Source of the DNA: Octopus bimaculoides
Lineage: Eukaryota
Assembly: GCF_001194135.2 (NCBI RefSeq)
Contig: NC_068981.1
Location: 199,325,593 to 199,371,967 of the forward strand
DNA: 46,375 bases
Direction of reading: 5' to 3'
The notes under the pieces are model-generated. The model was not told the origin of the DNA and did not search any database. It saw only the letters and a list, made by a program, of their open reading frames with translations. A program made the position numbers and the translations under genes. Position 1 is the first letter of the stretch. Each line of letters starts with the position of its first letter. Positions 9,600-43,379 of the stretch are shown here, piece after piece.

Positions 9600-9825
9600 T
9601 TCTCTCAGCTGAGAGTTACTTGGTGACCCGACAGGTGTTAGCATCACATAAAGAGCACCCAGTACACTCTGTAAAGTGGTTGGCATTTGGAAGGGCATCA
9701 GGTGTAGAAACCAGGCCAAAGCAGACACTAGAACCTGGCGCAGCTCTCTGGCTTGTCAGCTCCAGTCAAACTATTTGACCCATACGAACATGGGAAACGG
9801 ATGTTACATGATGATGATGATGATA
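9600..9825 (+). mobile_element. RTE 3' tail copy ending in (GAT)n
   Basis: aaagagcacccagtacactctgtaaagtggttggcatttggaagggcatc...ggatgttacatgatgatgat, the reverse complement of the family terminus. Confidence 0.7.
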
Positions 9826-9854
9826 TATATGTAGTGCTATAATATATACATTCA

Positions 9855-10205
9855 TTATTTACATTATTTACATTTGACGGATATCTTGTTTGTTAACACG
9901 TTTCGGCTGATATACCCTCCAGCCTTCATCAGGTGTCTTGGGAAATTTTGAACCTGGGTTCTCATTCCTAAGGTATTTTTCGATGTTGTTGTTGTTGTTA
10001 TCATTATTATTATTATTATTATTATTCAGGCCACTGCCTGAAATCGAACTCGGAATCTTGGGGTTAGTAGCCCGCTCTTTTAACCACTACACCATATGCC
10101 CACGAGCATCAAAAAATACCTTAGGAATGAGAACCCAGGTTCAAAATTTCCCTATGAATGCTGGAGGGTATATCAGTCGAAACGTTGTGCTAACACAAAC
10201 AAAAA
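9855..10205 (-). mobile_element. tRNA-headed SINE-like element with hammerhead tail (about 10101 to 9855), plus an inverted partial copy (about 10106-10205, +)
   Basis: Minus-strand head GGGCATATGGTGTAGTGGTTAAAAGAGCGGGCTACTAACCCCAAGATTCCGAGTTCGATTTC carries A and B boxes and a CT-ACT-AA anticodon loop. It is followed by (AAT)n, a body and a hammerhead core. 10106-10205 is the reverse complement of about 9885-9985. Confidence 0.8.
9895..9937 (-). ncRNA. Minimal type I hammerhead ribozyme, copy 1 (3-nt deletion at the cleavage site)
   Basis: GACAC CTGATGA A GGCTG-GAGGGTATAT-CAGCC GAAA CG TGTT. Intact core and 5-bp helix II. Confidence 0.65.
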
Positions 10206-11889
10206 GTTAAAACAATAACAACAAAAACTGGAGCAGTTGATTTGGGGACAAAATATGAACAACACAGAAACCAGATAATGGTTTCCAACTTTACACCATT
10301 CATAAATTAGTTCTGCTAGGCACAGCTTCTGTCCCCCAGGAGACAGGTCAAGTCAAATATGGGGCATACACCATTGCAGTGTGTTACTGCATTCACAGTT
10401 TGTCAGTATATTCTCGAATCGTCCTGGGTGACCCACAGAGCCGAGTCTCAGCCTTCCCCCATCTCCATGACATACCTCCTTATCTGCTGTGATTATGTGA
10501 CATGTGGTTGACCAACATGAGTGATTAGCCCAGCTGGATCTCCAGCGGAAAGAGCATGGTGAGTCCAGCTTGGAAAATTTAGTTACCTGGCCCAAACAAT
10601 GTGAGCTGGCAGACCCTGAGTCATACAAGTAACAAGGTGTGTCCCACTTATAAACTGTACACTTCTGAACACAACACATATAATGGAACTGACATTGCAA
10701 GTCCCCTTCAAAATAAACAGCTGATACCAAAGCATGTAACATATATTCTATGGAGTCACTACAAACAATGCAACACAACAAACACAATCACCAGCCAATA
10801 AGACCCTTCTTCCTCACATAACACTTTCCCCTTATTCTTCCTTCCTATCATCCTTCATACCTTGTTTTTTTCCCTCCTACCCTCCTTTTCTCCTACTCTC
10901 CTCTCCACCTACCTTCCCTACACGATCTCCTCCTACTCAATAAATCATAGATCAAACCTTAATCAAAATACAAAAACAATGTAAATATTTAATTTTTTAC
11001 ATTTTATTGAACAAAAATAAAAATAAACAAAATCAAACCAATTTGTGGAAGAAAAAGAAATAAAATTCAAGACATTTTTCTAGATATTCTTGTGAAAGCT
11101 TGAAACATTCTAGAATAAGGTGTCACAGTTTGGTTCCTTTATTTATTGTTTTGGTAATATCGATGGAGAAGCTGAGGTGTGCTCTGAATAATAAATGTCA
11201 CATTTAGCCCCTGTATCCTTCAATTTATTGCTGTCTATTGATGCCGACTGGAATTAAAACACCTACTTTATTGAGCAAGCATGTCCAGTTTCCATGGCTT
11301 TTGTCAGTGAAAAAAATTATTGGTTTGTACAAAGCACAGTGACACTTTGATGAATAGTTCCAATAACAGACAATCTTGAATTCAGAAGCCCAGCCGCACA
11401 CCCCCACCCCACAAATATAGACTAAAAGTATCACATCTCAATAGAATTCTTAAAATATATTTATTTCATTCTAAAAGAAAATTGGGTTTTTTTTTCCCTT
11501 ATTCAAAATTGTTTAATATTTGCTAGAGAAATATTTTTTCAGTGTGAAATATTTTTTCAGTGTGAAATGAAGTAAAAAAATATAGGTTTCGATCTGACTT
11601 TATTCTCAAAGTTAGATTTCATCCTAAATGAATACAAAAAACTGGTCGTTCAATTACATTTATGTTCTTCTGTAAGGAAAAAAAAAATTTAAGAACATCA
11701 AAACTTTTCTTTCTCATGGAACTTTTGCAACTTTTGGCAGAAATTCTGCTTCATTTTACATGGTAAGTGATAGGTTCATTATTTTTCGCATTGGCTCCAT
11801 ATGTGTGTGCGTGTGTGTGCGTGCATGTGTGTGGATTTGTATATATACAAACACACACACATATATATACCTTTGAAAATGTGCTGTGC

Positions 11890-12743: not shown

Positions 12744-13132
12744 CTGACTTTGGTATTCCCTCTGCCAAGTATTCCCTCTTCTGCAGGTCACCTGTTTTCT
12801 GTCCCTCTATTTATACTTTAACCTCTCATCACCTGGCACAAAGTCACCTCCCTCAATATCACTTCCCCTCTCAGTTACGGGGGGGGGGGGACTTTGTCTT
12901 GCAAGTTACGGGGTGACCTCACTGGTGCCAGTATCGTGTAAGAAGCATTCAACACACTCTGAAAAGTGGTTGCTGATAGGAAGCGCATCCAGAAATAGAA
13001 ACCATACCAAAGCTGATAACAGAGCTCGGTAATAGTTCTCTGACTTGTCAGCTCCTGTCAAGCCATCCAATCCATGCCAGCATGGAAAACAGATTTCAAA
13101 TGATGACAATGATGATGATGATGACGACGATG
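12744..13132 (+). mobile_element. RTE LINE 3' UTR fragment with (GAT)n tail
   Basis: Pyrimidine-rich UTR followed by aagtggttgctgataggaagcgcatccag...catccaatccatgccagcatggaaaacag...gatgatgat. Confidence 0.7.
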
Positions 13133-13953
13133 ATATGTGTGTGTGTGTGTGTGTGTGTATATAAGTGCATGTATGTTTATATGTATGTATGCCTGTATAT
13201 GTGTGTAGTAACAAGATATAACTTGGTGTGTGGATATACAATACATGCAATTGTTGATGTGATGAGTCGTGGTGAGGGCTGAGGTGGGCAATGGAGGTGA
13301 GAAGCTGTGTGTAGGGGTCCTTCCTTTTCTCACTGGAAGCCAATGTCAGGAAGGAACCAGAAGGGAAAAACGACAAACAGAAGAGAATCCTAAAACGATC
13401 GGCCCATGGAGCAGACCTTCCTTCTGCTTCTTTCTTCTACCCTTTTCATTATTTACTGCTTCTTTTTCCTGTGGTTAAGGTAAGGACAGATTATTTTTTC
13501 CTTGGTTCACTTAATTCTTGATAGAACAACCTAACAAATCTATAATCTACCCCTCAGGTAAAATATTGCCTAACAATGAACAAAATACTTGGAATGCTTA
13601 ATCCACCACCACCACCACCACCACCACCATACCATTCCGTCCATGCTTCCTTTCTTTATTCATCTTTCATGCAATAATCTGGAGATCAATTTGTATCCAG
13701 TTATTCCAGCAACATTTATTTCATAAGGTTTCCAAATATCTGCAGAATATTTAGAAATTTTCTTTACAATCATTTTTCTTTGGATCAAAACAACTCTGGG
13801 AAATAAAACTTCAAAAAAGTGAAATAAGAAAGAAATAAAATCAAAATCTCAAGCCAAAAGAACCCCCCTTCCAACCATACCCTACCCCAGAAAACAATAA
13901 AAAATTGAAAATACTCAAAGGAGCAATGTAGTAGTTATGTTATTAACAAGAAT

Positions 13954-18413: not shown

Positions 18414-20285
18414 CACACATATGCATGTGATGACAAAAAGGAACAGACTCCATACAGCATAACTACACATACAGACAGAGAGGGCTACTAATGGGAGTTG
18501 CAAGAGGAGCATTTCATGAAGATCTTTAATAGAAGTGGTTGGTGGGGGTGGGTAGGGTGGCAGAAAGAGGAGGAAAAGGTTCAGATTGCATTGCTATTTT
18601 TCATAAAAATAGTTCTGAAAATTACTTTAAAATTAGAGCATCATCATCACCACCAATAGATTCTCCTCTCCTGCATGCCACATTTAACCCCTCATATGCC
18701 TCACTTTTCTCTCAATACAGTTGTGCTTTGTCCTACATGTGCCCTGATATTGCAAATCCAACGGAGCATACTATGTTCATTCCTCTCCAGTCTATGCATG
18801 GCCTCTGCAGTCAGAGCCCATGTCCCACTATCATGTAATACAGCCGTTCTTACACAGGCATCATACAATCTACCTTTCACTCTGCGAGAGAGAGCCCTCT
18901 TGTGGCCAACAGAAGTAGTAGCTCTCTGAACTTCCTCCATCCTATTCTTATTCTAGAAACAATACTTTCAGAGCATCCACCCCCACCCCCTTTACTAATC
19001 TGGTCACCTAAATAGCAGAAACTATTTACTACCTCAAGAGAGCCTCCTGGGCATTTGAGAGAGTTTAAGTCCCTCGTGCCCTTCGTGCTTATTGTTCCTG
19101 TGCATCTGCCACACATGGAAGCGACCTTATCTGTTAATCTACCTCCAATTCTACTGCATCTCTTATGCATCCTTGACTTACCACCACCACCACCACCACC
19201 ACCACCACCATTATCATTTTCCATTTACCTGATGGAAGGAGAGTCTTGTCTGCTTTCTTGCTAGCAACAACTTTAGTCTTTGCTGAGTTAACTTTAAGGC
19301 CCTTTGATTCTAGGTTTTGCTTCTAGACCCAAAACTTTTTCTACAATTCTGCTTCAGATTCTGCAATAAGAGCAAGATCATCAGCATTTCGTAATTTCCA
19401 TGGGCATCCAGTTTTGAATTGCTCTGTTATGGCCTGGAGGACTATGAGTGAACTAAGAACTGATCCCTGGGGTACTCCAACTTGTACATTAAATTCATCA
19501 CTGTATTCAAGGCCAACAACTCTCACCTTCCTGACAGCCTCGCTGTACATGGCTTGAAAAGCTCTAACAAGCCACTCCTCTACTCCTAGCTTCCTTAGAG
19601 ACCACCAAATAAGAGAGCAGGGAACCTTGTCGAAAGCTTTCTCCAGGTCGACGAAGGCTAAGTACAATGGCTTACTTTTGACCAAATACATTTTTTGCAA
19701 CTGTCTCACTAGGAAGATGGCATCTGTGGTACTTCTGGGAACAAAACAAAACTGCATCTCATGTAGCTTAATTGTATCCCTAATCAGGGACAGAATGAAA
19801 TAAAACTCTTTCTGTAATTTCCATGTCCCGCTCCAGCGGCTTGATACCTCTGTAGTTGTTTCTTTCTAAAGCATCACCTTTATTCTTATGGCAGTTAACT
19901 ATAATGATACTATACTAGTCTTTGGGGGATGATGCCTTCTTGAATAACCTGATTGACTATGTGAGTGACTGGTGAGAATCCCACACAGCCTGATATTTTA
20001 ATCATCTTGGCAGTAATACCCAAAGGTCAGGGGGCTTTCTCTGTCTTCATATCCTTAACTGCTTCATCTTTTATACTTCTATCAACTCTGATGGCTGGTT
20101 CGATATTTGAAAGACTCTCCTTCTCCCAATCATTCTCCACATTTAATAAACTTTCATAATGGCATCTCTACTCATCTTTCTTCTGTGGGTCACCAAGTGC
20201 AAGCATACCATTAGCCATTCGCACACACCTACCACATCTCTATTCCCTCTGATACACTGCTTTGCTCAGATTTGTGCCTCAGAGG
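17505..20285 (-). mobile_element. 5'-truncated RTE-clade LINE (RT, long 3' UTR, (GAT)n tail), interrupted by microsatellites
   Basis: RT motifs STTDAIFLVRQLQ, LAFVDLEKAFDKVP, GVPQGSVLS and ADDLALIAES (19341-19757). FCYLGDQIS (18877-19224). KGRLYDACVRTAVLH (18701-18940). Tail at 17505. Confidence 0.85.
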
Positions 20286-21832: not shown

Positions 21833-23860
21833 CATCATCATCATCATCATCATCATCATTTAACGCCCGTGTTCCATGCTGGCATGGGTAGGATGGTACC
21901 ACAAGAGCCAGCCAGGCTGATGCCTGCACCAGATATCTGTGACTGTTTTCGCAGGATTCTTACAGCTGGATGTCCTTTCCTAACACCAACCACTCAGCAG
22001 AGTGGACTTAGTGCTTTCTATGTGGCACAAGCACAGGCTATGAGGTCAGTTTTGGCCAGGTTTTTACAGCTGGATGCCCTTCCAAATGCCAACCACTTTA
22101 CAATGTGGACTGGATGCTTTTTAAGTGGCACCTTCTGTGACAGGGTCACCAAGTACTTGCAAGGCAAAACCTTTTAAGGGGGGAGGAGGTGATGATGAAA
22201 AGGTTATAGGGAGACAGATACAGGTGTGTAGCTGAAGAGGAAGTACAAAGTTAACTGGCCGGAGAGAGAGAGAGAGAGTTCAGGAATGAAGAGAGAAACA
22301 GGTGTGCTACCGCAAAGAAAATACACAGTTGCTCAAACTGAGGGAAGTGCAGGAGAAGGAAAGAGAGAGAGTGGGAGACAGCAGGATGGAGAGGGTGGCA
22401 AAGTGCTGGGCATGCTTACAAGGGACAGGGATCAGAGTATAAATGAGATGGATGAGTAAAGGAAGAAAGAGATATGGATGGCGGCATACCCTTGAGGTCC
22501 AAATGCCATAATATAAGTGACAGGATATTGTGAAGGGAGTGCAATTAAAGAGTGCAAGTAAGTGGTGAAAGGCCTGGGGATGTATAGAGTTGGGGGGGGG
22601 GGGCTACTGGATAGCAATGATACAGATGAACAGGGGTGTGGGGACAGGATTAGGGAGTGAGAGCTAGGCATAGTGAATGAAGGAAGAAATGTGAGAACGA
22701 GAAGAGATGTAAATTGGTTTGTTGGGGTCAGGTGAGGGAAAAGTTATCTTGTTATGTGTGGGTGGAACACCCAGGTCGGGGGCAGCAGATGGCAATAATA
22801 GAGTGAGACAAGACATGTGGATAGAACGCACAGGTCGGGAGCAAGCAGAGAGCAAGTGGCACCAGGCCAAGAGGACGAGATTGGGGAGTGGGAGGTAATC
22901 AAAGTACATGAATGTACTCTTGCAGAAATGTGAGGAAGAGAAGGGATGTAGGGATGTAATTTGGTTCATTGTGGTAGAATGTGTGAGAATGTGTGAGAAT
23001 GTGTGAGAAGACCCATCCACTGACATGGATGGGTCTTCTCAAGAACTTCATATCACCNNNNNNNNNNNNNNNNNNNNNNNNNNNNNNNNNNNNNNNNNNN
23101 NNNNNNNNNNNNNNNNNNNNNNNNNNNNNNNNNNNNNNNNNNNNNNNNNNNNNNNNNNNNNNNNNNNNNNNNNNNNNNNNNNNNNNNNNNNNNNNNNNNN
23201 NNNNNNNNNNNNNNNNNNNNNNNNNNNNNNNNNNNNNNNNNNNNNNNNNNNNNNNNNNNNNNNNNNNNNNNNNNNNNNNNNNNNNNNNNNNNNNNNNNNN
23301 NNNNNNNNNNNNNNNNNNNNNNNNNNNNNNNNNNNNNNNNNNNNNNNNNGTACATACACATCCAATGGAGCATATTGCCTTCATTTCTCTCCAGTCTACG
23401 CATGTCTTATGCATTCAGTGCCCATGTCTCACTACCATGGCATATAGCTGTTCACACACAGGCATCATATAGTCTACCTTTCACTCTGGGAGAAAGAATC
23501 CTTTTGTTGCCAACAGAGGTAATGGCTCTCTGAACTTCCTCCACCCAATTCTTATTCTAGAAATAATACTTCCAGAGCATCCTCCACCATGGCTAATTTG
23601 GTCACTTGGGAAACAGAAACTGCCTACAACCTCAAGAGAACCTCCTGGATATTTGAAAGAATCTAAGCCCTGTGTGCTCTGAGTGCTTATAGTTCCTGCA
23701 CATCTGCCACATATAAAGACGACTTTATCTGTTAATCTACCTGTGATTCCACTGCATCTCTTACATGTCCATAATCTACACTGGGTGCAGCAAATGGAAT
23801 TACTTCCAACTCCTTTCCTACATATTGAACAATTATTTTCCCTTTGCACTTTTGACTGCA
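21833..23860 (-). mobile_element. 5'-truncated RTE-clade LINE with PHD-type finger, long 3' UTR and (GAT)n tail
   Basis: CSICRKGVGSNSICCTQCRLWTCKRCSG...CGRC...GSFCFPSDQIS...RIRIGWRKFRE (23481-23861). UTR homologous to 30800-31640. Confidence 0.85.
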
Positions 23861-24109: not shown

Positions 24110-24668
24110 GAGTGAGAGAGGGAGCAGTGCATGCCATCGAAGTGACACTGGGGTATAAATATACAAAACTTAATATACCCATCATATCTACCCATTTGAG
24201 GAGGGTACATGTGGCACATGCATCACAACCACGTGTGCACAATATGGTAATCTCATATCCAAATAAATGGTGCATGACCTTGCAGGCGGGGCTCAGTTAA
24301 GAAATTTCAACAGGCTAAGAAGTCCATCCTGTTCAAAAGGTCCTTGATTAGAGCTTGTTTAAGGGTGATGAGTAAAACACCCATGTTTTCAGAGGTGAGT
24401 TATTCAAACCCCAAAGAATCCTTCTCAACACATGGCTATGATGCTCCCCCACTACTTCTGCTCATCATCAGAGATGCACATATTGTCAGCCACCAAGGGA
24501 CATGCTCAACTGGTTAAGGTCAAACAACTGACAAGCAAATCTGTGGTATGGAGCAGAATATTTGCTGTAGGCCATCTTTTTATACCAAGACAAAACCTGC
24601 ACATATTAACACTTCCAATCAGTTAAGATCAGAAACCATGAGAGCAACTGCCTGGTACTGCACCAGGG
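24110..24668 (-). mobile_element. About 560-bp non-coding element embedded in an (ATT)n microsatellite
   Basis: Second copy at 7841-8194. (ATT)n on both sides (about 24099-24109 and 24674-24740). No ORF and no tRNA boxes recognised. Confidence 0.75.
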
Positions 24669-24690
24669 TATATCATTATTATTATTATTA

Positions 24691-24742
<52 letters not shown>

Positions 24743-25458
24743 AATCATAATATTATTATCAGACATTGTTTTCCTTGTTTTCTTTCTTTTCTACTAAATA
24801 ACAGTCTCATTAAAACATTGCTCCAGTTTATCTTTCTTTTCTTTGTTTAACAAAACTACAACCAAGAAATTATTATGAATTTAGTTCAATTAAAGCAATT
24901 TAGTTTAATTAAAACACCTGATATATTTAATAATATTACAATTCATTTGTCTTTTATCCTGGAGGATTATCTTCAATATATTCTGATTAAAACCTAGCTT
25001 GAATAATTTTAAAATCTTTCAAGTGAAATATTTTACAAAATAGTTTTAATTAATTTAATTATTGTTCTGCAATATAGAGTTGTGAATTTGAAACCAAATT
25101 ATAGCAGTTGATTACTGCTGCCAAACTAACGAGGAATAATTTGGGAAAAACTGACTCACAGCAAAGCAGCTTTTTTTATAAAGGTTTCGGCAGTTAAGAA
25201 AGTAAACTGTTTTCTTTGTTACCTTGGTAACAATTTTGTGGATCCATATATTGCTTAAAAAATCAAGGATGTTTATGGAGAGAAAAGAAACAGCAAAAAC
25301 TGAGGGAAGAACTGATTGGAAAAGAGGGGAAATATGTGAAGAATTCAGAAATTTATGTCTAATCTAAAACATTTGAAGATGAGAGGAAATCCTCATCATG
25401 ACCGTTTTCATACATTATTTACACTTGACGGATATTTGTCCTCATCTTGTTTGTTGTT

Positions 25459-25504
25459 AACACAAAGTTTCGGCTGATATACCCTCCAGCCTTCATCAGG
25501 TGTC
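25459..25504 (-). ncRNA. Minimal type I hammerhead ribozyme, copy 3 (one substitution from consensus)
   Basis: GACAC CTGATGA A GGCTG-GAGGGTATAT-CAGCC GAAA CTTT GTGTT. Helix I is GACAC/GTGTT and helix II is GGCTG/CAGCC. Confidence 0.7.
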
Positions 25505-25551
25505 TTGGGGAAATTTCAAACCTGGGTTCTCATTCCTAAGGTATTTTTCGA

Positions 25552-25622
<71 letters not shown>

Positions 25623-25732
25623 TTCAGGTCACTGCCTGGAATCAAATTTGGAATCTTGGGGTTAGTAGCCTGCGCTCTTAACCACGATTCGAAGATTAGC
25701 CAAGATTCCGAGTTTGATTTCCAGGTAGTGAT

Positions 25733-25815
<83 letters not shown>

Positions 25816-25876
25816 TAATAACAACAGCATCGAAAAATACTTTAGGAATGAGAACCCAAATTCAAAATTTCCCCAA

Positions 25877-25919
25877 GACACCTGATGAAGGCTGGAGAGT
25901 ATATCAACCAAAATGTGTT
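25877..25919 (+). ncRNA. Decayed hammerhead copy 4
   Basis: GACAC CTGATGA A GGCTG GAGAGTATAT CAACC AAAA TGTGTT. G12 has been lost by a CG to CA change. Confidence 0.5.
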
Positions 25920-25978
25920 AACAACAAACAAGATGAGGACAAATATCCATCAAAAATATAAATAATGTAAATATTGTA

Positions 25979-26109
<131 letters not shown>

Positions 26110-27954: not shown

Positions 27955-28219
27955 AAGCACCATTTGAGCATGGCCATTGCCAGTACTGCGTGACTGGCCC
28001 TCGTACCTGTGGCTGGTAAAAACACCCACTACACTCTCAGTGTGGTTGGCGTTAGGAAGGGCATCCAGCTGTAGAAACTCTGCCAGATCAGATTGGAGCC
28101 TGATGTAGCCATCTGGGTCACCAGTCCTCAGTCAAATCGTCCAACCCATGCTAGCATGGAAAACAGACACTAAACAATGATGATGATGTTGATGACGATG
28201 ATGATGATGATGATGACGA

Positions 28220-31076: not shown

Positions 31077-33405
31077 GCAAACAGAAACAGGTGTACTGCT
31101 GTAAAAGAGATACATGGTTATCCAACCTGAGGGAGGAACAGGGGAAGAAGAGAAAGAGAGAGCGAGAGAGAGAGAGAGTGGGAAATAGCAGGAGAGAGAT
31201 GATGGAAAACTGCCGGGCATAATCACAAGGGATGGGGATCAGAATATAAATGGGATGGTCAAGCAAGAGAAGAGAGAGATGGATGGCAAGTAGCAGAGCA
31301 AGTACCCCTGAGGTACAGAGGTCACAATATAAGTGGCAGGACACTCTCTATCCAAAGAAGCATGAGTAGGGAGTGGGGGGATGGAAGTGGTGAAAACCTG
31401 GGTATATAGAGGCGGGGGTGGAGGGCTACTGGATATCAATGATACAGTGAACAGGGCCTTGAGGACAGGATTGGAGAGCGAGAGACAAGCAAAGTGTGTG
31501 GAAGAGGAGATTGAGGAAGAGAAGAGATGTAGAGGTGTATTTGGTTTGTTGGGGCCAGGATGTGTGAAAGGTTTTCTTGTAATGTTTGGGTGGAACACTT
31601 TGAGAACTCAGTTCCACTGGCATAGGTGAGTCTTCTCAAGAACCTCAAATTGCCAGACACCTCGGTCCATTGTCACTTCCTCCATGAACCCTAATATCCT
31701 GAGATTGGTCCTTACCACTTCATCCCACATCTTTCTGGGTCTACATTTTCTGCAGGTACCCTCCACTTTCAGTGATCAGACTTCTTTATACACTTGTCTT
31801 CATTCATATGCATCACATGTCCAAACCAACATTAGTCTTCTCTCTTGCATTCTACATTTGATTTCTCTTATGACCCACTTTTCTCTCGATACATTTGCAC
31901 TTTGTCCTACATGTGCCCTGATAATGCAAATCCAGTGGAGCATACTGCCTTCATTTCTTTCCAATCTATGCATGTCTTACGCATTCAAAGCCCATGTCCC
32001 ACTATCATGTAATACAGCCGTTCTTACATAAGCATCATAGAGTCTACCTTTCACTCTGAGAGAGAGTCCTTTTGTTGCCAACAGAGGTAATAGTTCTCTG
32101 AACTTTCTCCATCCTATTCTTATTCTAGAAATAATACTCTCAGAGCATCCACCACCATTGCTAATTTGGTCACCTAGGTAACAGAAACTTCCTTGTCATT
32201 TGAGAGAATCTAAGCCCCGTGTGCTCTTAATGCTTATTGTTCCTACACCTCTGCCACATAGGAAGACAACTTTATCTCTTAACCTATCTGTGATTCCACT
32301 ACACCTCTTATGTGTCCATGGTTTACACTGGATGCAGAAAATGGAATTACTTTCAACTCCTTTCCTACATATTGAGCAGGGCCATTTACCTGACAGAAAG
32401 AGAATCTTGTCTGCTTTCTTGTTCACAATAACTTTGGTCTTTCCAACGTTCATTTTAAGACTCTTTGATTCCAGGTTTTGCTTGCATACTTGGAATTTTT
32501 TCTCCAATTCTACTACAGATTCTGCAATAAGAGTGAAGTCACCAGCATAAAGTAGTTCCTGTGGGTGGGTATCCAATCTTGAGTTCCTCTGTTATGGCCT
32601 GGAGGACTATAATGGATAAGAGTGGGCTGAGAACTGAGCTTTGGTGAACCCCTACTTGTTCGCTAAACTCATCACTGTATTCGTGGATGCCTCTCACCTT
32701 ACTGACAGCACCATATTACATGGTTTGGATGGCTCTAACAAGCCACTCCACTACTCCTAGCTTCCTTGGAGACCACCACATAACAATGCAGGGAACTCTG
32801 TTGAAAGCTTTCTCCAGGTCAACAAAAGCTTAGTACAATGACTTACCTTTGGCCAAATACTTTTCCTCGCAGCTGTTTCACTTGGAAGATGGCATCTGTA
32901 GTGCTCTTCCCAAGTACAAAAACCAAACTGCATCTCATCTAGTTCAATTCTATTCCTAATCAATTGAACTTCTCAGTAATTTTCATGACTTGGTCCAGCA
33001 GCTTGATATCTCTGTAGTTGTTTCTTAGTGACTCCTCTACTCTACTAAGCTGTACCCTACAATGCCAGAAATTTTAATCATCTTAGCAGTGATTCCTGAT
33101 GGTCAAGGAGCTTTCCCTGTCTTCATGTCCTTAACTGCTTTATCTATAATGCTGCCATCACCTGTGATGGCTGGTCCCTCAACTGGTTCGATATTTGGTA
33201 GATTCTCCTTCTGCCTTTCATTTTCCACATTTAGTAACCTTTCACAGTGACACTTCCATGCATCTTTCTTCTCGGAGTCACTAAGTGCAAGCATACCATT
33301 ATCCATCCGCACACATTTCTCACCTACCACACATCTATTTTCTCTGCTTTGCAATCCTGAACACCTTGTGCCTCTGACCTCCGATCCTCATGCTGTAGGA
33401 CATTT
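30514..33405 (-). mobile_element. 5'-truncated RTE-clade LINE, longest copy (linker, RT with PHD finger, about 1.1-kb 3' UTR, (GAT)n tail)
   Basis: VVGEKCVRMDNG...KTGKAP (33103-33354); MQFGF and downstream motifs (32757-32963); YAGDFTLIAES...KTKV...CSICRKGVESNSIFCIQCKPWTHKRCSG (32196-32576). Frameshifted, with the catalytic YADD mutated. Confidence 0.9.
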
Positions 33406-34283
33406 GCATTTAGTGTGAAAATTCTTGAGGAGAGGGAAGGAAAAGAAAGATGAGAGGAAAAGGTAAAGAATTGAAACAAAATAAAATAAAACGAGAGATT
33501 GAAAAATCAGGTAGAGGCAAAACAAATTAGGGGTGGGGGATGGTCCGTGCACTGCCAAGAAAATGGTTTTGGATTACAAAACCTAAGCTAAAGATAATGT
33601 GCACTGTATAGTTGTAGTATAGGCAATAAACCATGTAAACTTAAAGCTATGCCCCCATCATTATTCAAATGAGGTTCAGTAAAGCAATGAAGTATCCAGT
33701 TACATGATCTTAAAATTGAGTTCAAAATACGATGTCACCGTATCACTAGTCCATAGTAACCACTTGTAAAATAAATTTCACTCAGAGACTCTTTGACACA
33801 AATACATACATAAATATCATCCAGTTACATGATAAAACGTAAAACTTTATGTATTCTACGTTTACAAGCCAAAGTCATTCGAGAATTCCTATTCAGAATC
33901 GTTTATCTAAAACGTTCAACAATACTTCAGTTGTGCATAAATCGTTTTATCTTTAATTGTTGTCTTCTATGACGTTTACCAAAATCTTCCATTGCATCGC
34001 TTAATGTTTCTTTCTTCCAAACACTATGTATAGACCGTAAGCAGAGTCGTACGCTTTCTAGCCAGGTTCTGAAATGAACGTTTATAATATCTGTTTTATA
34101 TCTTTTAGCTTTTAAACCTACTTAAACCCGTCTAGCGGCACGGGTCTTAGTCGTATATTCCACATTGTAAATTAAAGTTCATATTTAAAGTCAAAATGTT
34201 TATATTAATATGATTGCATAAATAGAAAAAAATTATTATTTCTAAATCTCTGAACGAGAAACATTCAGTAACAGTACTCTAGA

Positions 34284-34840
34284 GTAAAGATTATTTGCCA
34301 ACAGAATGTGGCAGTCCTAATTAGGACGAATATTTCAGTTATTTAGCCCCAGGAAACATCGTCTGCAGCTGGCTATCAAGGCACTAACTGCGTACGTATA
34401 TTTTCTAACAAGGAAGTTTACTGTCCCCACTCAGTTCGAAAGCAATATCTGTGTACCAATGGTTTCTGGGTTATTTCTCTTCATCAACACAGAATAACTG
34501 TTCGGCCAGAGATGGCGATACTGAATTCTTATTCGAAATATATACTTTTCAAAGTGACACACAGTTACTGATCTCATAAATAGAAAAATTATTATTTCTA
34601 AATCGTCGCCACCTCTAGCTGAGCAGTTATTCTGTGTTGATGAAGATAAATAACCTAGAAACCATTGGTACACAGATATTGATTCAGAGCTGAGTGGGGA
34701 CACGAAGCTCCCTTGTTCGAAAATATAAGGATGCAAATAGTGCGTCGATAGCCAGCTGCAGACGATGTTTCTTGGGGCTAAATAACAGAGATATTCGTCC
34801 TAATCAGGACTGTCACATTATGTTGGCAAATAATCTTTAC
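34284..34840. repeat. 557-bp fold-back (MITE-like) with about 235-bp inverted arms and an 87-bp spacer
   Basis: 34284-34518 is colinear with the reverse complement of 34606-34840, at roughly 85% identity by eye. Ends are gtaaagattatttgccaaca...tgttggcaaataatctttac. Confidence 0.9.
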
Positions 34841-37297: not shown

Positions 37298-37739
37298 ATG
37301 GATTGTCCGTTTAAAAACAAAATGTGCTATAGTTGTCAGAAGCTGGGACACAAGAGTTCTTATTGGAGAACAAGACTACGAGGTTCGAACACAGAAAGTT
37401 CAGCGGTGAGTAATTGCGATGGAAAAACAAGAAAATTCGTGCATGTAAAAATTAATGATGTGAATACCAAATTACAGTTAGACACAGGTAGTGACATCTC
37501 GATTATAAATGCGGATACTTGGAAAAAAATTAGTAAACCGAGATTACGCAAAACAGCGAAAATAGCAAGTGGCGTAAGGGGTGATAAATTACATTTCATA
37601 GGTAAAACATGTATCGACGTTACATTTCGAGGAGAGACACACGAAGCAAAATTATTCATTGTGGATAACACAGTCAATCTGTTTGACACAGATTGGTTTG
37701 AACTATTCGATTTATGGCTCCTCTGTAGTGATGTCAGTA
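37298..37739 (+). pseudogene. gag: Gypsy gag zinc knuckle and aspartic protease remnant
   Basis: CYSCQKLGHKSSYW (CCHC with the last C lost); LQLDTGSDISII (DTG active site); NLFDTDWFELF. Confidence 0.85.
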
Positions 37740-38228
37740 TGTGACAACCTACAATTTTACAATTACATGCGACAAGGAAAATAAGAACTTGTGAGACGGT
37801 CATAATAAGTCATAACATATTTATTACTGGATGTAATGCGTTAACATATAAGAATGGTTTGAAAGAAAAGGCTTGTAACATACTACATGAACATACTTTG
37901 CAATCATGTCTCAAAGCAAATGAGGCGAATATGCGCGCATGTGGGTGTGATTGTGAGTGGGGTGGCTCAATGCGTACGACCAGGAACCGACAGGCAAAAG
38001 TAGTGCGAAGTTAGAAATGCGTCCGCTTTATATAAGGGACGAACTGGAAGTCCCTGGCTACCACGTCATCTGGAAGTTAAAGCTTCTAGAATATCCGAGA
38101 ATTTTCGAGAATGTCGAGGGAGATTACTCTCGTTAGATCCCTTTTTCGTTTTGCTTTCCTGCTTGATTGCCAGGGGTCATTACACTTCCCCATAAATCTT
38201 TACTGCAATAACATAAATGGTTGTCACG
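37740..38228 (-). mobile_element. 489-bp solo-LTR-like insertion between protease and RT
   Basis: Termini TGTGACAACC...GGTTGTCACG form a 10-bp inverted repeat with one terminal mismatch. On the minus strand there is TATATAAA (38034-38027) and AATAAA (37825-37820). Removing the insert rejoins the protease frame to the RT frame. Confidence 0.75.
38027..38112 (-). promoter_or_regulatory. Heat-shock element, UPRE/CRE-like site and TATA box
   Basis: 38083-38112 reads cTTCt aGAAt aTCCg aGAAt tTTCg aGAAt (six alternating pentamers, five perfect). TGACGTGG lies at 38068-38061 and TATATAAA at 38034-38027. Confidence 0.6.
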
Positions 38229-38272
38229 TTAAAAACAAGTCTTCGGAATAACTGAAAGAAATATTGAAATAA

Positions 38273-40600
38273 ATGTCCCCGCAGTTGTTATCAGAGGATT
38301 TAGGTCTATATAGAAAGACGGAAGCCTATTTCCTAATAAGTGAAAACGTTGTAACTGTATTTAAAGCAAGCAGAAAAGTACCGTTCGTGGCAATTGAAAC
38401 CATAAATGAAGAATTGGACAGACTCAGAAAGAGGAGAGTCATCAAAAAGGTGGATTACTCGAAGTGGGCGGCATCCACGGAATGTATTAAAGAAATAATA
38501 AGAGCAGACTGTGTGCCGATTTCGCTACAGGATTGAACGATTGCTTGAAAACATACCACCATCCACTCCCGACTGCAGAGGACATTTTTTCAAAGTTAAA
38601 TGGTGGAAAGATTTTTTCCAAATTAGATCTGTCTGAAGCCTATTTACAGATTAAAATAAATGACAAATGCTCAAATAATTTGACAATAAATACATACAGA
38701 GGATTGTATAGATACACGCTATTACCATTTGGATTAAAAGTTGCACCAGCAATATTCCAGCAAATCATGGATACTATGTTATCTGATTGTGAATTTACAA
38801 TCCTGTACTTGGACGATATTTTGAGTAATTCTTGTGAACAGCACGTGGAACACATAAAAGCTATGTTTAAGAAAAGTTTTCGGGTTCACTTTGAGTGAAG
38901 AAAAATGCGAATTCTTTCTAGCCCAAAATGAATACTTCGGGCAAATAGTTGATAAAAGTGGTAGACGTCCTGGCCCGTCGAGGTCAGACGCAATGAGGAA
39001 TATACCTTCGCCGACAAATATTCCAACTTTACAAGCATTTCTTGGCTTGGCAAACAATTAGCATTTCTTGGCTTGGCAAACAATTAGCATTTCTTGGCTT
39101 GGCAAACAATTATCAAAACTACATTCCTAATATGCACAAGTTAAGAACACCATTGAACGACTTACTAAAGAAAGGAGTAAAGTGGAATTGGTCCACAAAG
39201 GGCCAAAACACTTTTGAAGAAATAAAAGAAATTTCTAATCTCAGACCTGTTTTTAGCACATTACGATCCTAAAATGGACATCATTGTAGCGTCTGATGCT
39301 TCCAAGCACTGATTAGGTGCAGTTCTACTTCATAAATATGAAGACTGAAATACAAAACCAGTGGTTCATGTTTCGAGCTCGCTAATAGCAGCAGAGAAGA
39401 GATATAGTCAAATTGAAAAGGAGGCCCCTAGCAATTATTTTTGCAGTTAAAAGTTCCACAGGTTTCTGTATGGCAGAAGGTTTTTATTGCAATCAGATCA
39501 TAGACCTTTGCTGTCGATTTATGGGTTTAAAAGAGAGTTACTGGCTCATACTACGAACCGCTTGCAACATTGGGGTGTAATATTACTAAATTATAATTTC
39601 AAAATGCAATACATTCCACCGAAAATAAAAATCAGTCATGTGGACTGCCTTTCGAGATTAATTAAAAAAAAATATGGAACCACTAGAACTAGAAGAGACT
39701 GTTATAGCCACACTGCTGGCAGACAGTGAAATTAAAAGTGTTATGACGAACGTTATCCAAGAACTACCAGTGATAGCACAGGATACAAGAATGAAAGCTG
39801 TAGGTGATGAGTATATTACGTAAATGAAAGAAGCTTTAAAAAATAAACTGAATAAAAATTCAGATGCCAATAGTTTTTCAATTTGCAACGATATTCTGAT
39901 GTATTCCCATAGAGCGGTGGTTCCAGCTACATTACAAAAAGGTGTATGGCAACAATTTCACAGCGGACATCCAGGAATGGCAAGAATGAAGGGTCTGATA
40001 AGGAGTTATGTCTATTGACTGTCTATGGAACGAGATATCGTAAACTCATTGAGAACGTGCCGAGGTTGTGCACTTACGGCCAAAGCCCCACCAGTAAAAT
40101 ATCAATCGTGGCCAGAGGCGGAGAACCAATGGTCTAGGTTACACATTGACTATACCGACCCAGTAAACGGCACTTACTACCTAATCGTAGTAGATAGCCG
40201 TACAAGTGACCAGAGGTTTGCAGGATTTATAGACCAATCTGTAAAACAACTATAAAGTTCTTATACGAATTGTTTGCGCGATATGATGTCCCTGACACAT
40301 TAGTTTCAGACAATGGAACGCAGTTCTCTGGGTATGAATTCAAGAACTTCTGTAAAAGGCATGCGATAAAGTATATTTTCACTCTACCTTACCACCCGAG
40401 GTCAAACGGGTCAGGTAGAAAGATTTGTGGACACTTTTAAGAGAGCATTAAGAAAAGCAAGAAATAAATTAAGTAACAACGAAGTACTGACAAATTTCTG
40501 AAGAATATACAGATTGACCCCCAATTCAAGTACAAATTCAGGGAAGTCTCCCACAGAATTGATGTTCGCAAGAATAATATCTATTTTTGTTAAGCTATAA
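38273..40600 (+). pseudogene. pol: Gypsy pol remnant (RT, RNase H, integrase)
   Basis: RT: PLPTAEDIF, FSKLDLSEAYLQ, PFGLKVAPAIFQ, YLDD. RNase H: DAS, YSQIEKE, SDHRPL. Integrase: HSGHPGM...CRGC, LHIDY, SDNGTQF, PYHPRSNG...ERFV.TFK. Confidence 0.9.
39035..39112. repeat. Perfect 26-bp triplication inside pol
   Basis: gcatttcttggcttggcaaacaatta x3, at 39035, 39061 and 39087. Confidence 0.95.
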
Positions 40601-40683: not shown

Positions 40684-40987
40684 TGGTGACCCTGTCCATG
40701 CAGGTGCCACTTAAAAAGCATCCAGTCCACACTGTAAAGTAGTTGGTGTTTGGAAGGGCACCCAGCGGTAAAAACCCTGCCAAAACTGACCTCTCCTGTA
40801 CTTGTGCCACGTAAAAAGCATTCAGTCCACTCTGCTGAGTGGTCGGTGTTAGGAAGGGTGTCCAGCTGTAAAAATCCTGCCAAAACAGTCACAGAAGTCT
40901 AGTGCAAGCTTCTGCCTGGCCGGCTCCTGTCAAACCATCCCACCCATGCCAGTATGGAAGGCAAGCATTAAACAATGATGATGATAA
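40684..40987 (+). mobile_element. RTE 3' tail copy truncating the gypsy element
   Basis: Two ggaagggy.yccagc.gtaaaaa modules, then ccatcccacccatgccagtatgg...(GAT)n. Confidence 0.75.
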
Positions 40988-41041
40988 TACTTATATATTT
41001 ATTGGGGTGGGGCAAATTTATTAACCGGAACAAAATGGAGT

Positions 41042-41385
41042 GAGTTTCAGTCATTAGAGTCTCAGTCATTAGAGTCTCAGTCATTAGAGTCTCAGTCATT
41101 AGAGTCACAGTTACCAGAATCTCATTCATTAGAGTCTCAGTCATTAGAGTCTCAGTCATTGGAGTCTCAGTCATTGGAGTCTCAGTCATTAGGGCCCCAG
41201 TCATTAGAGTCACAGTTACCAGAATCTCATTCATTAGAGTCTCATTCATTAGAGTCTCAGTCATTGGAGTCTCAGTCATTGGAGTCTCAGTTATTGGAGT
41301 CTCAGTTATTAGAATCTCAGTCATTAGAGTCTCATTCATTAGAGTCTCAGTCATTAGAGTCTTATTCATTAGAGTCTCAGTCATT
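41042..41385. repeat. 15-bp minisatellite, about 23 units
   Basis: Unit agagtctcagtcatt with variants. The diagnostic variant pair recurs 105 bp apart. Confidence 0.95.
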
Positions 41386-43379
41386 TCTCTCAGTGTATGG
41401 CCGAAAATGCTGGCACCACGTGACTATCCTGAATATCTTTATCCTTTCTTTCCCTTTCTTTTTCTGCCATTCTCTCAGGAGTGTTTTCAGAAAAGACTCC
41501 AAATGTTTTAGACTTTCTTCCAAATCTGATGTTTAGAAAGCAACTAAATACATCCTCCCCACCCCCTCCCGCCTCAACGAAATACTTAAGAGATCACACA
41601 TGAAGCAGACATCAGACAATTTCATTGTCTTCTTTCTCTTTTAATTTTCTTTTTCACTTCATGTTCATCAAAACACTGATCTAAATTAACATCATCACAA
41701 CTATTAGCGACGAACAAAGACGACAAAGGAATTCTTGTTAAAGTTGAATCATCAAAACATTTATTTTTCCTTTATCTGATGCTATTTGACAGTCTTATCT
41801 CTTTCTTATAATATCTGAACTTTGTGAATTCAATTCGAATCCAATCCTTCCAAATAACTCCTCCTTCATCTCTTTGGTTCTCCTAATCACAGACTTTTGC
41901 TAATGATTCTTGGTTGTGTCTCGTGGAATCTGTTTCTTTCAGGTGCAACCTTATCAAGTAAGTTGGCAAGTTTCTCTTTGAAATTTGTCAGAGGTTCAGT
42001 AGAAGTGGGTAGATTTTGTATTTGTTGTTTAGCTGTTTTTTTAATTGTCTTTTCTTTGTCTACTTGATGGGGTGGAAATAGCATTGGATCCATTGTCATG
42101 ATGTGATTGTAGAGTCATAAGTTGGATTGCTTTCTTCCTGTGAGATGCACATACATAAGAATTAATTCAATATAAAAAGAAACATCAAATATGGGATTGG
42201 ACAAGTTCTTTTGTGGTGGTAAAATCCCTTCGTGTAGTTACCAGTCTAATGAATTCCTTTTTAGGTTTCCTTTCTTGTTGGTCAATACTAAGTTACTAAT
42301 CAATCACTATGTGATAAATTTCTTTAACATTATTTTGTCAAAATAAACAAAAAACTAAAATCTAATCCAATGAAATCTAAAAAATTATGAAGCAATAAAA
42401 TGAAATTTAAATCATTCCACTCACATCTTGAAACATTCTTCGAAATGCTTAAAAGAATTACATAAAGTCCTTCCTTTCTAAAGCTTCAACTGCTAAAGCT
42501 GTGAGCCAAACACAGTCAAAAGCATAAAATACAAGAAATCTTTTTTCTTCTGCTGGAGGCAAAATGTTGTAAGATTTGAGGAGAAATCACATGAAATCAA
42601 TCAAAGTATATTGATAGTTAATAAGGAGTCACCTCGAATCCATAATCCTTATAAATAATTTATTGAATATTATCATCTGGATTCCTCTTGAATGTTCCAT
42701 TTTATCTTATAATCCTCCTCCTTATCATCATCATCATCGTCATCGTCGTCGTTGTTGTCGTCGTAATCATCACCACCATCATCATCATCTTCTTCATCAT
42801 CATTGTTTATTTACTAACTTATTAATTCTTTATAACATTTTATTTTTTCCCCATAAGATAATTAGCTGTAGAGAGTAATTCAACCAATCCTCCCTATGCT
42901 AATTAACTGTTAACAATGATTGTATTAATTAGTATTTTCAACTAATAAGAATTTGGAACAACGTTGAAGAGAAAAGCAATTCCATAAAATGAAAACAAAA
43001 TTAAACAAGAAGAAAATGGTGCAAAGACTTGAAGCAGGAAGATAAAGAATTATAAAGAAACTCCATCATTTTTGAAGAGTCCTCAAAAACTAGTGTCTGG
43101 AGTAACTAGAAATGGCTTGCAGAAGTAGATAAACAGCGTTCAGAGTAAGTAGAATTGGTATGTTGAGGTAAATAACTAATACCTGGGACAAAGAGTGATG
43201 GTAAGTGCCAGTGAAAAACTCAGATAATAGAATTTGTGAAAATAAGCATGTGTGCCATATTGGTGAAAGTGGTGGGGGTGGGGGTGAATCTGATATTTCT
43301 AACAGAGTTCTCGTTTGAAGACTAAGTGCAGGTTGTTGGTTATTTAATAATAATAATGAATTTATTGTATACGGCAGCC

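What the first reader, a model, noticed from the sequence alone, without database searches (positions are those of the whole stretch)
25410..25970. tRNA-headed SINE-like element ending in a minimal hammerhead ribozyme
Seen: four copies of one motif (9895-9937 -, about 10150-10191 +, 25459-25504 -, 25877-25919 +) give the consensus GACAC CUGAUGA A GGCUG-GAGGGUAUAU-CAGCC GAAA CGUU GUGUU. This has the full hammerhead core, helix I (GACAC/GUGUU), helix II (GGCUG/CAGCC), one extra A after A9, and a loopless palindromic helix III (AACGUU) ending in a GUU triplet. Upstream is a Pol III tRNA-like head (A and B boxes, CT-ACT-AA loop) and an internal (AAT)n. Each copy here carries a different lesion; only the consensus is intact. 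Established: minimal type I hammerheads with palindromic helix III are typical of Penelope-like elements and cleave as dimers. An extra nucleotide after A9 occurs in natural active hammerheads, and Schistosoma SM-alpha is a precedent for tRNA head plus hammerhead. Inference: this is a non-autonomous Pol III retroelement that defines its RNA end by self-cleavage and borrows a Penelope RT/GIY-YIG instead of a LINE. I am not aware of this being described in cephalopods but cannot check.
Basis: partly seen in the sequence, partly recalled or inferred. Interest (0 to 1): 0.9.

Follow-up and report, generated by a model that had tools for sequence, protein, structure and literature searches.

The report
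tRNA-headed SINE carrying a Penelope-type hammerhead
A short octopus-type mobile element with a tRNA-derived front end carries, near its tail, the stripped-down hammerhead ribozyme motif typical of Penelope-like retrotransposons and sits in the head-to-head pairs those elements make, so it probably hitch-hikes on them, but only four decayed copies were available and cleavage is untested.

Summary
Four copies of one ~290-nt element lie at the stated coordinates. Each has a tRNA-derived head, an internal (AAT)n, a conserved 48-nt block, a hammerhead-like motif, then 35-85 more conserved bases ending in a short tandem-repeat tail.

Copy C passes a strict hammerhead descriptor by itself. That descriptor found nothing in 300 shuffles or in 20 Mb of random sequence.

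The "extra A" after A9 is not a lesion. A nucleotide between 9 and 10.1 is a published hallmark of Penelope-like-element (PLE) minimal hammerheads, as are a short helix I and paired motifs on opposite strands.

This is the published signature of PLE insertion and the best evidence for PLE mobilisation.

Weak points:
- The palindromic helix III rests on copy B alone; the copies split 2 vs 2 by a 3-nt indel there.
- There is no covariation and no Rfam hit.
- No partner PLE was seen.
- No further copies could be fetched.
- All copies continue past the predicted cleavage site, so self-cleavage does not define the retrotransposed RNA end.

Verdict: a plausible new variant of a known kind, moderately interesting.

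The parts
10027..10101 (-). Copy A: complete tRNA-derived head. A box TGGTGTAGTGG is at 10084-10094 and B box GAGTTCGATTT at 10041-10051. The 5' end lies 5 nt or less from the junction with copy B.
   Evidence: canonical tRNA positions read directly from the sequence
9986..10026 (-). Copy A: internal microsatellite, (AAT)8 followed by GAT(AAC)n
9938..9985 (-). Copy A: conserved central block, CATCGAAAAATACCTTAGGAATGAGAACCCAGGTTCAAAATTTCCCAA
9895..9937 (-). Copy A: hammerhead-like motif. Core, helix I and helix II are intact, but 3 nt are missing after GAAAC, so no U16.1-H17 cleavage triplet is in register.
9847..9894 (-). Copy A: post-motif region (with a 13-nt deletion relative to C and D) and the (TGTAAATAA)n-like 3' tail
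10102..10106 (.). Head-to-head junction between copies A and B; 5 nt of unassigned origin
10107..10262 (+). Copy B: inverted, 5'-truncated copy consisting of the 3' module only. It begins within 3 nt of the boundary between the microsatellite and the module. Motif remnant at 10154-10191: a 10-nt deletion removes the helix I 5' strand and C3-G5, and G10.1 is changed to T. It is the only copy with GAAACGTTG. About 35 nt are inserted in the post-motif region.
25411..25458 (-). Copy C: post-motif region AACAACAAACAAGATGAGGACAAATATCCGTCAA plus the tail GTGTAAATAATGTA
25459..25504 (-). Copy C: best-preserved hammerhead motif, GACAC CUGAUGA A GGCUGG-AGGGUAUA-UCAGCC GAAA CU UU / GUGUU. It is the only window sequence that passes the strict descriptor. 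Its MFE fold is helix I plus a 6-bp helix II.
25505..25624 (-). Copy C: central block (25505-25553) and (AAT)n (25556-25621)
25625..25685 (-). Copy C: tRNA-derived head, 5'-truncated at about tRNA position 15. B box at 25639-25649.
25686..25699 (.). Head-to-head junction between copies C and D; 14 nt of filler (GATTCGAAGATTAG)
25700..25827 (+). Copy D: head truncated at about the variable loop (25700-25735), then (AAT)n (25736-25813) and a degenerate continuation
25828..25984 (+). Copy D: central block (25828-25876); decayed motif (25877-25919) with G12 changed to A, a C-A mismatch in helix II and the 3-nt-shorter form; post-motif region (25920-25953); and about three units of (TGTAAATAA)-like tail (25954-25984)
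25984..26063 (.). (TA)40 microsatellite directly abutting copy D's tail. It may be the insertion target or an expansion of the tail.

Best explanation
This is a non-autonomous, SINE-like retroelement of an octopod genome, about 290 nt plus a variable (AAT)n.

Proposed steps:
1. A tRNA-derived head with A and B boxes drives Pol III transcription (inferred).
2. The 3' part, about 150 nt, is a module of the kind found at the ends of Penelope-like elements. It includes a PLE-type minimal type I hammerhead (shown as a sequence match).
3. The PLE RT/GIY-YIG enzyme recognises this module and copies the RNA by target-primed reverse transcription (inferred).
4. This yields 5'-truncated copies and, as is characteristic for PLEs, an inverted 5'-truncated twin abutting the 5' end (arrangement shown, cause inferred).

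The hammerhead is most likely inherited as part of the borrowed PLE end. As a monomer it lacks helix III and should stay uncut, so the full RNA, including the 48-71 nt downstream of the cleavage site, is the template. Any cleavage would need two copies pairing through a short palindromic helix III. Its role, as in PLEs themselves, is unknown.
For: Element and copies:
- Four homologous copies share one architecture.

Head:
- It aligns end to end with tRNAs, with 51 identical positions and z = 8.5-9.0.
- Copy A starts 5 nt or less from tRNA position +1.
- No T4+ run occurs on the sense strand of any copy, against 1-6 on each antisense strand.

Motif:
- The strict descriptor hits copy C; 0 of 300 shuffles and 0 in 20 Mb of random sequence do.
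- Core plus helix II is expected 0.004 times per window.
- The MFE of A and C is exactly helix I plus helix II.

PLE-type features (PMC4209133):
- a nucleotide between A9 and G10.1
- G10.1-C11.1
- a 5-bp helix I
- a reduced or palindromic helix III
- dual motifs about 250 and 400 bp apart on opposite strands.

PLE insertion signature (PMC8557442):
- 5' truncation
- microsatellites next to the ends.

Host context:
- The window shares interspersed repeats with three Octopus genomes.
- O. vulgaris has 30 recently active Penelope families (PMC13282606).
- Non-autonomous PLE derivatives sharing the 3' end or pLTR with autonomous PLEs are documented (preprint 10.64898/2026.07.22.740005).
Against: - Only four decayed copies from two loci were available. 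They show no compensatory changes and no fold stability beyond shuffles (z = -0.5 to -0.8; 0.03 for the whole module).
- The helix III consensus is unresolved at 2 vs 2, and the palindrome occurs in one copy only.
- Rfam hammerhead and tRNA models and ARAGORN give no hit.
- No PLE ORF or PLE terminus is in the window, and no partner sequence was available for comparison.
- The 3' end is a short tandem-repeat tail, (TGTAAATAA)n, as in many LINE/SINE pairs.
- No partial direct tandem (pLTR) and no TSD were found.
- The element is absent from 3 x 24 kb of Octopus rhodopsin loci, so its copy number is unknown.
- Only copy A reaches the tRNA 5' end.
Confidence: 0.55

Rival explanations
1. It is an ordinary LINE-dependent tRNA-derived SINE. 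The 3' tail of short tandem repeats is recognised by a LINE reverse transcriptase. The hammerhead-like string is an inactive relic or an accident, and the inverted pairs arose by another route, such as insertion preference for existing copies or twin priming with two RNAs.
For: - The tail is a variable number of TGTAAATAA-like units, typical of stringent LINE/SINE partnerships.
- LINE RT fragments are abundant in the window and LINEs are the largest TE order in O. vulgaris.
- There is no covariation and no Rfam hit.
- Two of the four copies lack a cleavage triplet in register.
Against: - A full hammerhead descriptor match is expected about 1e-4 times per window.
- The motif also carries PLE-specific extras that the core does not require.
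- Head-to-head pairs at both of two loci are not a known outcome of LINE-driven SINE insertion, but they are the described PLE pattern.
- No LINE fragment in the window shares the 3' region.
Confidence: 0.2
2. The copies are 5'-truncated terminal fragments (pLTR ends) of a longer Penelope-like or other retroelement. The tRNA-like stretch is internal sequence, not a Pol III head, so there is no SINE.
For: - All four copies are 5'-truncated to different extents and abut another copy, so no free 5' end is seen.
- Most dispersed minimal hammerheads are thought to be truncated PLEs.
- Copy B is the 3' module alone.
Against: - The longest copy ends 5 nt or less from tRNA position +1, and none of four copies extends further. 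This is unlikely for random truncation of a 3-kb element.
- The tRNA-like part spans the whole tRNA in the sense orientation with correctly spaced A and B boxes.
- The sense strand has no T4+ run.
Confidence: 0.12
3. It is a DNA-level palindrome: a foldback or MITE-type DNA transposon with roughly 280-bp terminal inverted repeats, or a local inverted duplication.
For: There are long inverted repeats at both loci (183 nt at 86%, I2). Rfam hairpin-type miRNA models match weakly. A second, unrelated long inverted repeat lies at 34284-34840.
Against: - The arms are very unequal at locus 1 (255 vs 156 nt, with B lacking the head and the microsatellite).
- The arms end in variable numbers of tail repeats rather than sharp TIR termini.
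- No TSD was found.
- The centre is a tRNA-derived sequence in the orientation expected for a retroposon.
Confidence: 0.05

Closest known systems
Minimal type I hammerheads of Penelope-like elements (Cervera and de la Pena 2014, PMC4209133; Lunse, Weinberg and Breaker 2017, cited)
   Same: - Full core and G10.1-C11.1.
- An unpaired nucleotide between A9 and G10.1.
- A short (5-bp) helix I.
- Helix III reduced to a loopless ACGU/ACUU.
- Motifs in pairs a few hundred bp apart on opposite strands.
- Location near the 3' end of a retroelement.
   Different: - Helix II is 5-6 bp with an 8-10-nt loop, against 7-8 bp in the Schistosoma families.
- The motif sits behind a tRNA-derived head in a ~290-nt non-coding element, not in the pLTR of an RT/EN-encoding element.
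- No sequence comparison with an actual PLE terminus could be made.
Sm-alpha / Sj-alpha SINE-like retroposons of Schistosoma (Ferbeyre 1998 and Laha 2000, as cited in PMC2770079 and PMC6765202)
   Same: Both have a tRNA-derived, Pol III-type head followed by a hammerhead in a short non-coding repeat.
   Different: - Sm-alpha carries a canonical type I hammerhead with loop-loop contacts that cleaves efficiently, and multimeric transcripts are processed to units.
- Here the motif is the minimal PLE type.
- The copies are dispersed inverted pairs, not tandem arrays.
- A conserved 3' region follows the cleavage site.
Metazoan non-LTR retrozymes (PMC7229834; preprint 10.64898/2026.07.22.740005)
   Same: Both are short non-coding elements with type I hammerheads, proposed to be non-autonomous parasites of PLEs and related to pLTR sequence.
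   Different: - Retrozymes are defined by tandem repeats of 170-400 bp and abundant circRNAs.
- They have no tRNA head.
- Invertebrate ones have canonical hammerheads.
- No tandem copy is present here.
Non-autonomous Chlamys PLE derivatives such as MRC1 (PMC8557442)
   Same: Both are short non-coding elements presumed to use a PLE enzyme through a shared 3' end, with complex insertion structures.
   Different: Those form pLTRs and head-to-tail multicopy insertions, lack a tRNA head and mostly lack hammerheads.
Octopus tRNA-derived SINEs OR1, OR2 and OK (Ohshima and Okada 1994, cited)
   Same: They come from the same host group and have tRNA-derived heads. The head here is closest to Arg/Thr-type tRNAs, a comparison made from memory.
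   Different: One or other of OR1 and OR2 is listed as a CORE-SINE, depending on the source. No CORE domain is seen here.

Membership tests
Hammerhead ribozyme (type I, minimal PLE variant) | Conserved core: C3 U4 G5 A6 N7 G8 A9 and G12 A13 A14 | tested here: met
   The core is intact in copies A and C. D has G12 changed to A, and B has lost C3-G5.
Hammerhead ribozyme (type I, minimal PLE variant) | Helix II closed by G10.1-C11.1, and helix I formed by the flanking strands | tested here: met
   In A and C, GGCUG(G)/(U)CAGCC forms 5-6 bp and GACAC/GUGUU forms 5 bp including one G-U. The MFE fold is exactly these two helices.
Hammerhead ribozyme (type I, minimal PLE variant) | Cleavage site U16.1-H17 in register with helix I | tested here: inconclusive
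   It is present in C (U-U) and B (GUU) and absent in A and D, which are 3 nt shorter. The ancestral state is 2 vs 2.
Hammerhead ribozyme (type I, minimal PLE variant) | [quoted passage not shown] | tested here: met
   An A is present at this position in all four copies (hallmark quoted).
Hammerhead ribozyme (type I, minimal PLE variant) | Palindromic 15.2-16.2 or loop 3, allowing a dimeric helix III | tested here: inconclusive
   ACGU occurs in B only; C has ACUU. An explicit double-hammerhead structure evaluates to -22.7 kcal/mol, against -27.2 for two monomer MFEs.
Hammerhead ribozyme (type I, minimal PLE variant) | Covariation supporting helices I and II | tested here: inconclusive
   There are 0 compensatory pairs among four sequences, and 90.9% of cells are paired against 89.2% in shuffles.
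Hammerhead ribozyme (type I, minimal PLE variant) | Match to the Rfam hammerhead covariance models | tested here: not met
   No hit at gathering score or at E <= 10, even on a 76-nt slice. From my own knowledge, those models expect a helix III and no inserted nucleotide, so minimal variants may well be missed.
Hammerhead ribozyme (type I, minimal PLE variant) | Mg2+-dependent self-cleavage | not testable with these tools
   This needs in vitro transcription of monomer and dimer constructs.
tRNA-derived SINE | 5' head derived from a tRNA, with A and B boxes at tRNA spacing | tested here: met
The A box matches 10/11 and the B box 9/11, with T54-A58 at canonical positions. ARAGORN and the Rfam tRNA model do not call it, as expected for a decayed head with a broken acceptor stem.
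tRNA-derived SINE | Element 5' end coincides with the tRNA start; short and non-coding | tested here: inconclusive
   Copy A starts 5 nt or less from +1 but abuts copy B. C, D and B are truncated. Length is about 290 nt and there is no ORF longer than 90 aa.
tRNA-derived SINE | Dispersed in many copies, flanked by target-site duplications | tested here: inconclusive
   There are two loci in 46 kb, none in 3 x 24 kb of Octopus DNA, and no TSD of 7 bp or more.
tRNA-derived SINE | 3' end shared with an autonomous partner | not testable with these tools
   No octopus TE library or genome search was available, and nothing in the window matches.
Non-autonomous derivative of Penelope-like elements | 5' truncation with an inverted 5'-truncated copy abutting the 5' end | tested here: met
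   Both loci show it: A(-)/B(+) with a 5-nt junction and C(-)/D(+) with a 14-nt junction. The definition is quoted.
Non-autonomous derivative of Penelope-like elements | Partial direct tandem (pLTR) | tested here: not met
   No direct tandem copy was found in the window.
Non-autonomous derivative of Penelope-like elements | Sequence similarity to the terminus of an autonomous PLE in the same genome | not testable with these tools
No RT/GIY-YIG ORF was found among the 10 window ORFs scanned.
Non-autonomous derivative of Penelope-like elements | Insertion bias for microsatellites | tested here: inconclusive
   Copy D abuts (TA)40. Copy A's tail lies about 20 nt from the (GAT)5(AT)4 at the end of another SINE. 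With n = 2 and a tail that is itself repeat-prone, this is not decisive.
Non-LTR retrozyme | Tandem repeats of 170-400 bp, each with a hammerhead, giving circRNA | tested here: not met
   No tandem arrangement was found. circRNA is not testable here.
MITE / foldback DNA transposon | Equal terminal inverted repeats with sharp ends and constant TSDs | tested here: not met
   The arms are unequal, the terminal repeat numbers vary and there is no TSD.

The most novel reading that the evidence does not exclude
Octopods harbour a Pol III-transcribed, tRNA-headed SINE lineage that parasitises Penelope-like elements rather than LINEs. It would do so through a captured PLE end containing a dimer-dependent minimal hammerhead. 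That would make it the first SINE-PLE partnership with a defined small RNA handle. It would also explain part of the thousands of 'orphan' dispersed minimal hammerheads in animal genomes.
Probability: 0.4. Interest if true: 0.7.

Novelty: new variant of a known kind. Interest (0 to 1): 0.5.

Why it matters
The role of the minimal hammerhead in Penelope-like elements is still described as unknown. Most such motifs in animal genomes are unexplained dispersed singletons.

A ~290-nt Pol III element that carries only the PLE end module would be a very small natural substrate. It could be used to ask what the PLE enzyme recognises, whether the hammerhead fold or its cleavage is needed, and how the inverted twin copies arise.

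It would also add a second autonomous partner class for SINEs and would help annotate the many 'unclassified SINE' families of octopus genomes.

If the 3' end instead matches a LINE, the finding reduces to an ordinary SINE with a fossil motif.

Tried and rejected
Attempts to get more copies, all of which failed:
- A protein-space search with a spurious ORF spanning the element found nothing.
- Exact-pattern scans of metagenome, viral and prokaryote contigs with two patterns gave 0 hits.
- A full-text search for the sequence strings gave 0 hits.
- I fetched Octopus DNA through rhodopsin. The three orthologous 24-kb loci share other repeats with the window (81-89% identity) but lack the element.
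- Exact look-ups of two window ORFs were not on record.
- TE-protein routes led to a non-octopus contig.

Detectors that gave nothing useful:
- Rfam returned only sub-threshold plant miRNA hairpin hits. These are artefacts of the inverted pairs.
- ARAGORN found nothing even at relaxed thresholds.

Analyses that were not informative:
- Thermodynamic z-scores.
- The cofold of two motif copies prefers other pairings to the double hammerhead.
- The TSD search was negative.

Ideas considered and dropped:
- That one arm of each pair is much older than the other. Private substitutions are C 7 vs D 12 and A 2-3 vs B about 10, part of the latter being alignment artefact. This is not significant.
- That the (ATT)n-tailed repeat at 24400-24750 is related. 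It is a different family.
Full report
**1. Observation**

They are parts of four copies of one element that align over their whole length. Neither blastn nor nhmmer finds a fifth copy in the window.

**2. Anatomy, 5' to 3' (coordinates)**

- A 75-nt tRNA-derived head.
- A variable (AAT)n.
- A conserved 48-49-nt block (CATCGAAAAATACCTTAGGAATGAGAACCCAGGTTCAAAATTTCCCCAA).
- The 43-46-nt hammerhead-like motif.
- A conserved 34-nt stretch (AACAACAAACAAGATGAGGACAAATATCCGTCAA).
- A tail of 1.5-3 TGTAAATAA-like units.

**3. Is the motif more than chance?**

The strict descriptor requires a 5-bp helix I, CUGANGA, 0-1 extra nt, helix II of at least 4 bp closed by G10.1-C11.1, GAAA, then U16.1 and H17 (not G) in register with helix I.

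- It hits only copy C.
- It hits none of 300 dinucleotide shuffles of the window and nothing in 20 Mb of composition-matched random sequence.
- Core plus helix II alone hits A and C, and occurs about once per 10 Mb at random, or 0.004 per window.
- The minimum-free-energy fold of A and C is exactly helix I plus a 6-bp helix II with the core unpaired. The energies are not better than shuffles, however (z = -0.5 to -0.8).
- Four related sequences give no compensatory change.
- Rfam's hammerhead models do not match, even on a 76-nt slice at E <= 10. From my own knowledge, those models expect a helix III.

**4. What kind of hammerhead?**

Cervera and de la Pena (PMC4209133) list features that emerged for the minimal hammerheads of Penelope-like elements (PLEs) beyond what their search required. 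[quoted passage not shown] They also note pairs of motifs 100-700 bp apart on opposite strands.

The element shows the first three, and its motifs lie in opposite-strand pairs about 250 and 400 bp apart. The palindrome is in copy B only.

The weak point is helix III:
- B reads GAAACGUU|GUGCU, a loopless ACGU palindrome with a GUU triplet.
- C reads GAAACUUU|GUGUU.
- A (GAAACGUGUU) and D (AAAAUGUGUU) are 3 nt shorter and have no cleavage triplet in register.

The split is 2 vs 2, with one long and one short form in each pair. At least two indel events hit this spot, and the ancestral state cannot be called from the window. A microhomology (GT) deletion is mechanistically easy, so I lean about 65:35 to the long form. 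This is inference.

**5. The head**

There are 51 identical positions with Arg-ACG or Thr-AGT types, with z = 9.0 and 8.5 against shuffles.

- Read directly, U8, A14, U33, a purine at 37 and T54-T55-C56-G57-A58 fall at canonical positions.
- The A box matches 10/11 and the B box 9/11.
- The acceptor and part of the T stem are broken, which explains why ARAGORN and the Rfam tRNA model are silent.
- No copy has a T4+ run on the sense strand, while each antisense strand has 1-6. This is compatible with Pol III transcription but weak, because the copies are related and the sense strand is A-rich.

**6.

The region 25410-25970 is two copies joined head to head: C on the minus strand and D on the plus strand, with 14 nt of filler between them. 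The copies at 9847-10262 are the same: A on the minus strand and B on the plus strand, with a 5-nt junction ([I2], 83).

- In each pair one copy is long. A is complete to 5 nt or less from tRNA +1. C is truncated at about position 15.
- The other copy is more 5'-truncated. D is truncated at the variable loop. B lacks the head and the microsatellite and starts within 3 nt of the 3' module.

Craig et al. (PMC8557442) describe PLE insertions as follows:
- They are highly 5'-truncated.
- They are biased to microsatellites.

Copy D abuts a (TA)40 tract. Copy A's tail lies next to the (GAT)n(AT)n end of another SINE. Two of two loci showing this architecture is the strongest argument here for a PLE enzyme.

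**7. What speaks against, or remains open**

- Every copy continues 48-71 nt past the predicted cleavage site. In A, C and D this stretch is conserved and ends in the same kind of tail, so the reverse-transcribed RNA was uncut. The claim that the element 'defines its RNA end by self-cleavage' is not supported.
- The tandem-repeat tail resembles those of LINE/SINE pairs.
- There is no partial direct tandem and no TSD of 7 bp or more.
- No PLE ORF or terminus is in the window.
- Because A's 5' end abuts B, a free full-length 5' end has not been seen.

**8. Organism and more copies**

The window shares interspersed repeats (81-89% identity) with the rhodopsin loci of O. vulgaris, O. bimaculoides and O. 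sinensis, which I fetched for this purpose. The source is therefore an octopod or a close relative. The element is absent from those 3 x 24 kb.

All other routes to further copies failed. O. vulgaris is reported to have 11.6% SINEs, 893 unclassified recently active SINE families and 30 recently active Penelope families (PMC13282606). Candidate partners therefore exist in the genus.

**9. Mechanism (best reading, confidence 0.55)**

- Pol III transcribes from the tRNA head through the module to a flanking T-run (inferred).
- The 3' module mimics a PLE RNA end and recruits the PLE RT/GIY-YIG enzyme (inferred).
- Target-primed synthesis gives a truncated copy and an inverted twin (arrangement shown, cause inferred).
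- The hammerhead came along as part of the borrowed end. As a monomer it has no helix III and stays intact. Cleavage, if any, needs two RNAs or tandem copies. I put the chance that master copies cleave at about 0.4.

Rivals:
- A LINE-dependent SINE with a fossil motif (0.2).
- Truncated ends of a longer PLE without a true SINE head (0.12).
- A foldback or MITE DNA element (0.05).

**10. Comparison and novelty**

Each ingredient is known:
- tRNA-headed, hammerhead-bearing SINE-like elements (Sm-alpha and Sj-alpha in schistosomes).
- Minimal hammerheads in PLE ends.
- Non-autonomous PLE parasites: retrozymes and Chlamys derivatives.

The combination of a tRNA head and a PLE-type minimal hammerhead, dispersed as inverted twins in a cephalopod, was not found in the searchable literature.

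I rate it a new variant of a known kind, with interest 0.5. The claim rests on four decayed copies and makes no demonstrated functional point yet.

Noticed in passing
34217-34840: A second long inverted repeat has arms at 34284-34518 and 34606-34840 (235 nt, 88% complementary). Each arm is preceded by a direct copy of a ~30-nt AT-rich string (cataaatagaaaaattattatttctaaatc). It has no hammerhead core. It may be another complex or inverted insertion, or a foldback element.
   Followed up: partly
9641-9830, 12931-13134, 28131-28217, 40704-41006, 43449-43648: A different and commoner SINE family ends in (TGA)n/(GAT)n. Copy A of the studied element sits about 20 nt from the tail of one of them. 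The family is also absent from the three Octopus rhodopsin loci.
   Followed up: partly
25828-25984 (copy D): Of copy D's 12 private substitutions, 7 are G>A and 2 are C>T on the sense strand. Some are at CpG sites. The rest would fit deamination of the first cDNA strand, but there are too few sites to judge.
   Followed up: partly
10107 (copy B 5' end): Copy B begins within 3 nt of the boundary between (AAT)n and the 3' module. Either the microsatellite stops the reverse transcriptase, or the 150-nt module is a mobile unit in its own right.
   Followed up: no
25587-25773 and 9936-10157: Rfam plant miRNA precursor models (MIR7533, E = 5e-13; MIR2630, E = 1.6e-9) match far below their gathering scores. 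This is an artefact of the long hairpin formed by the inverted pairs, not evidence of miRNA genes.
   Followed up: yes
18753-19233, 23357-23831, 31927-32378; 37298-38898; 3273-4835; 45300-45662: The window holds three diverged copies of a LINE fragment (RT end plus PHD finger), a Ty3/gypsy-type protease-RT fragment and other RT-related ORFs. None of the 10 ORFs scanned showed a GIY-YIG or PLE signature.
   Followed up: partly
40982-41445: A 15-bp minisatellite of about 30 units lies directly after a SINE dimer.
   Followed up: no
24400-24751: Another short repeat ends in a long (ATT)n. It is unrelated to the studied element despite a shared GGGTATATCA string.
   Followed up: yes
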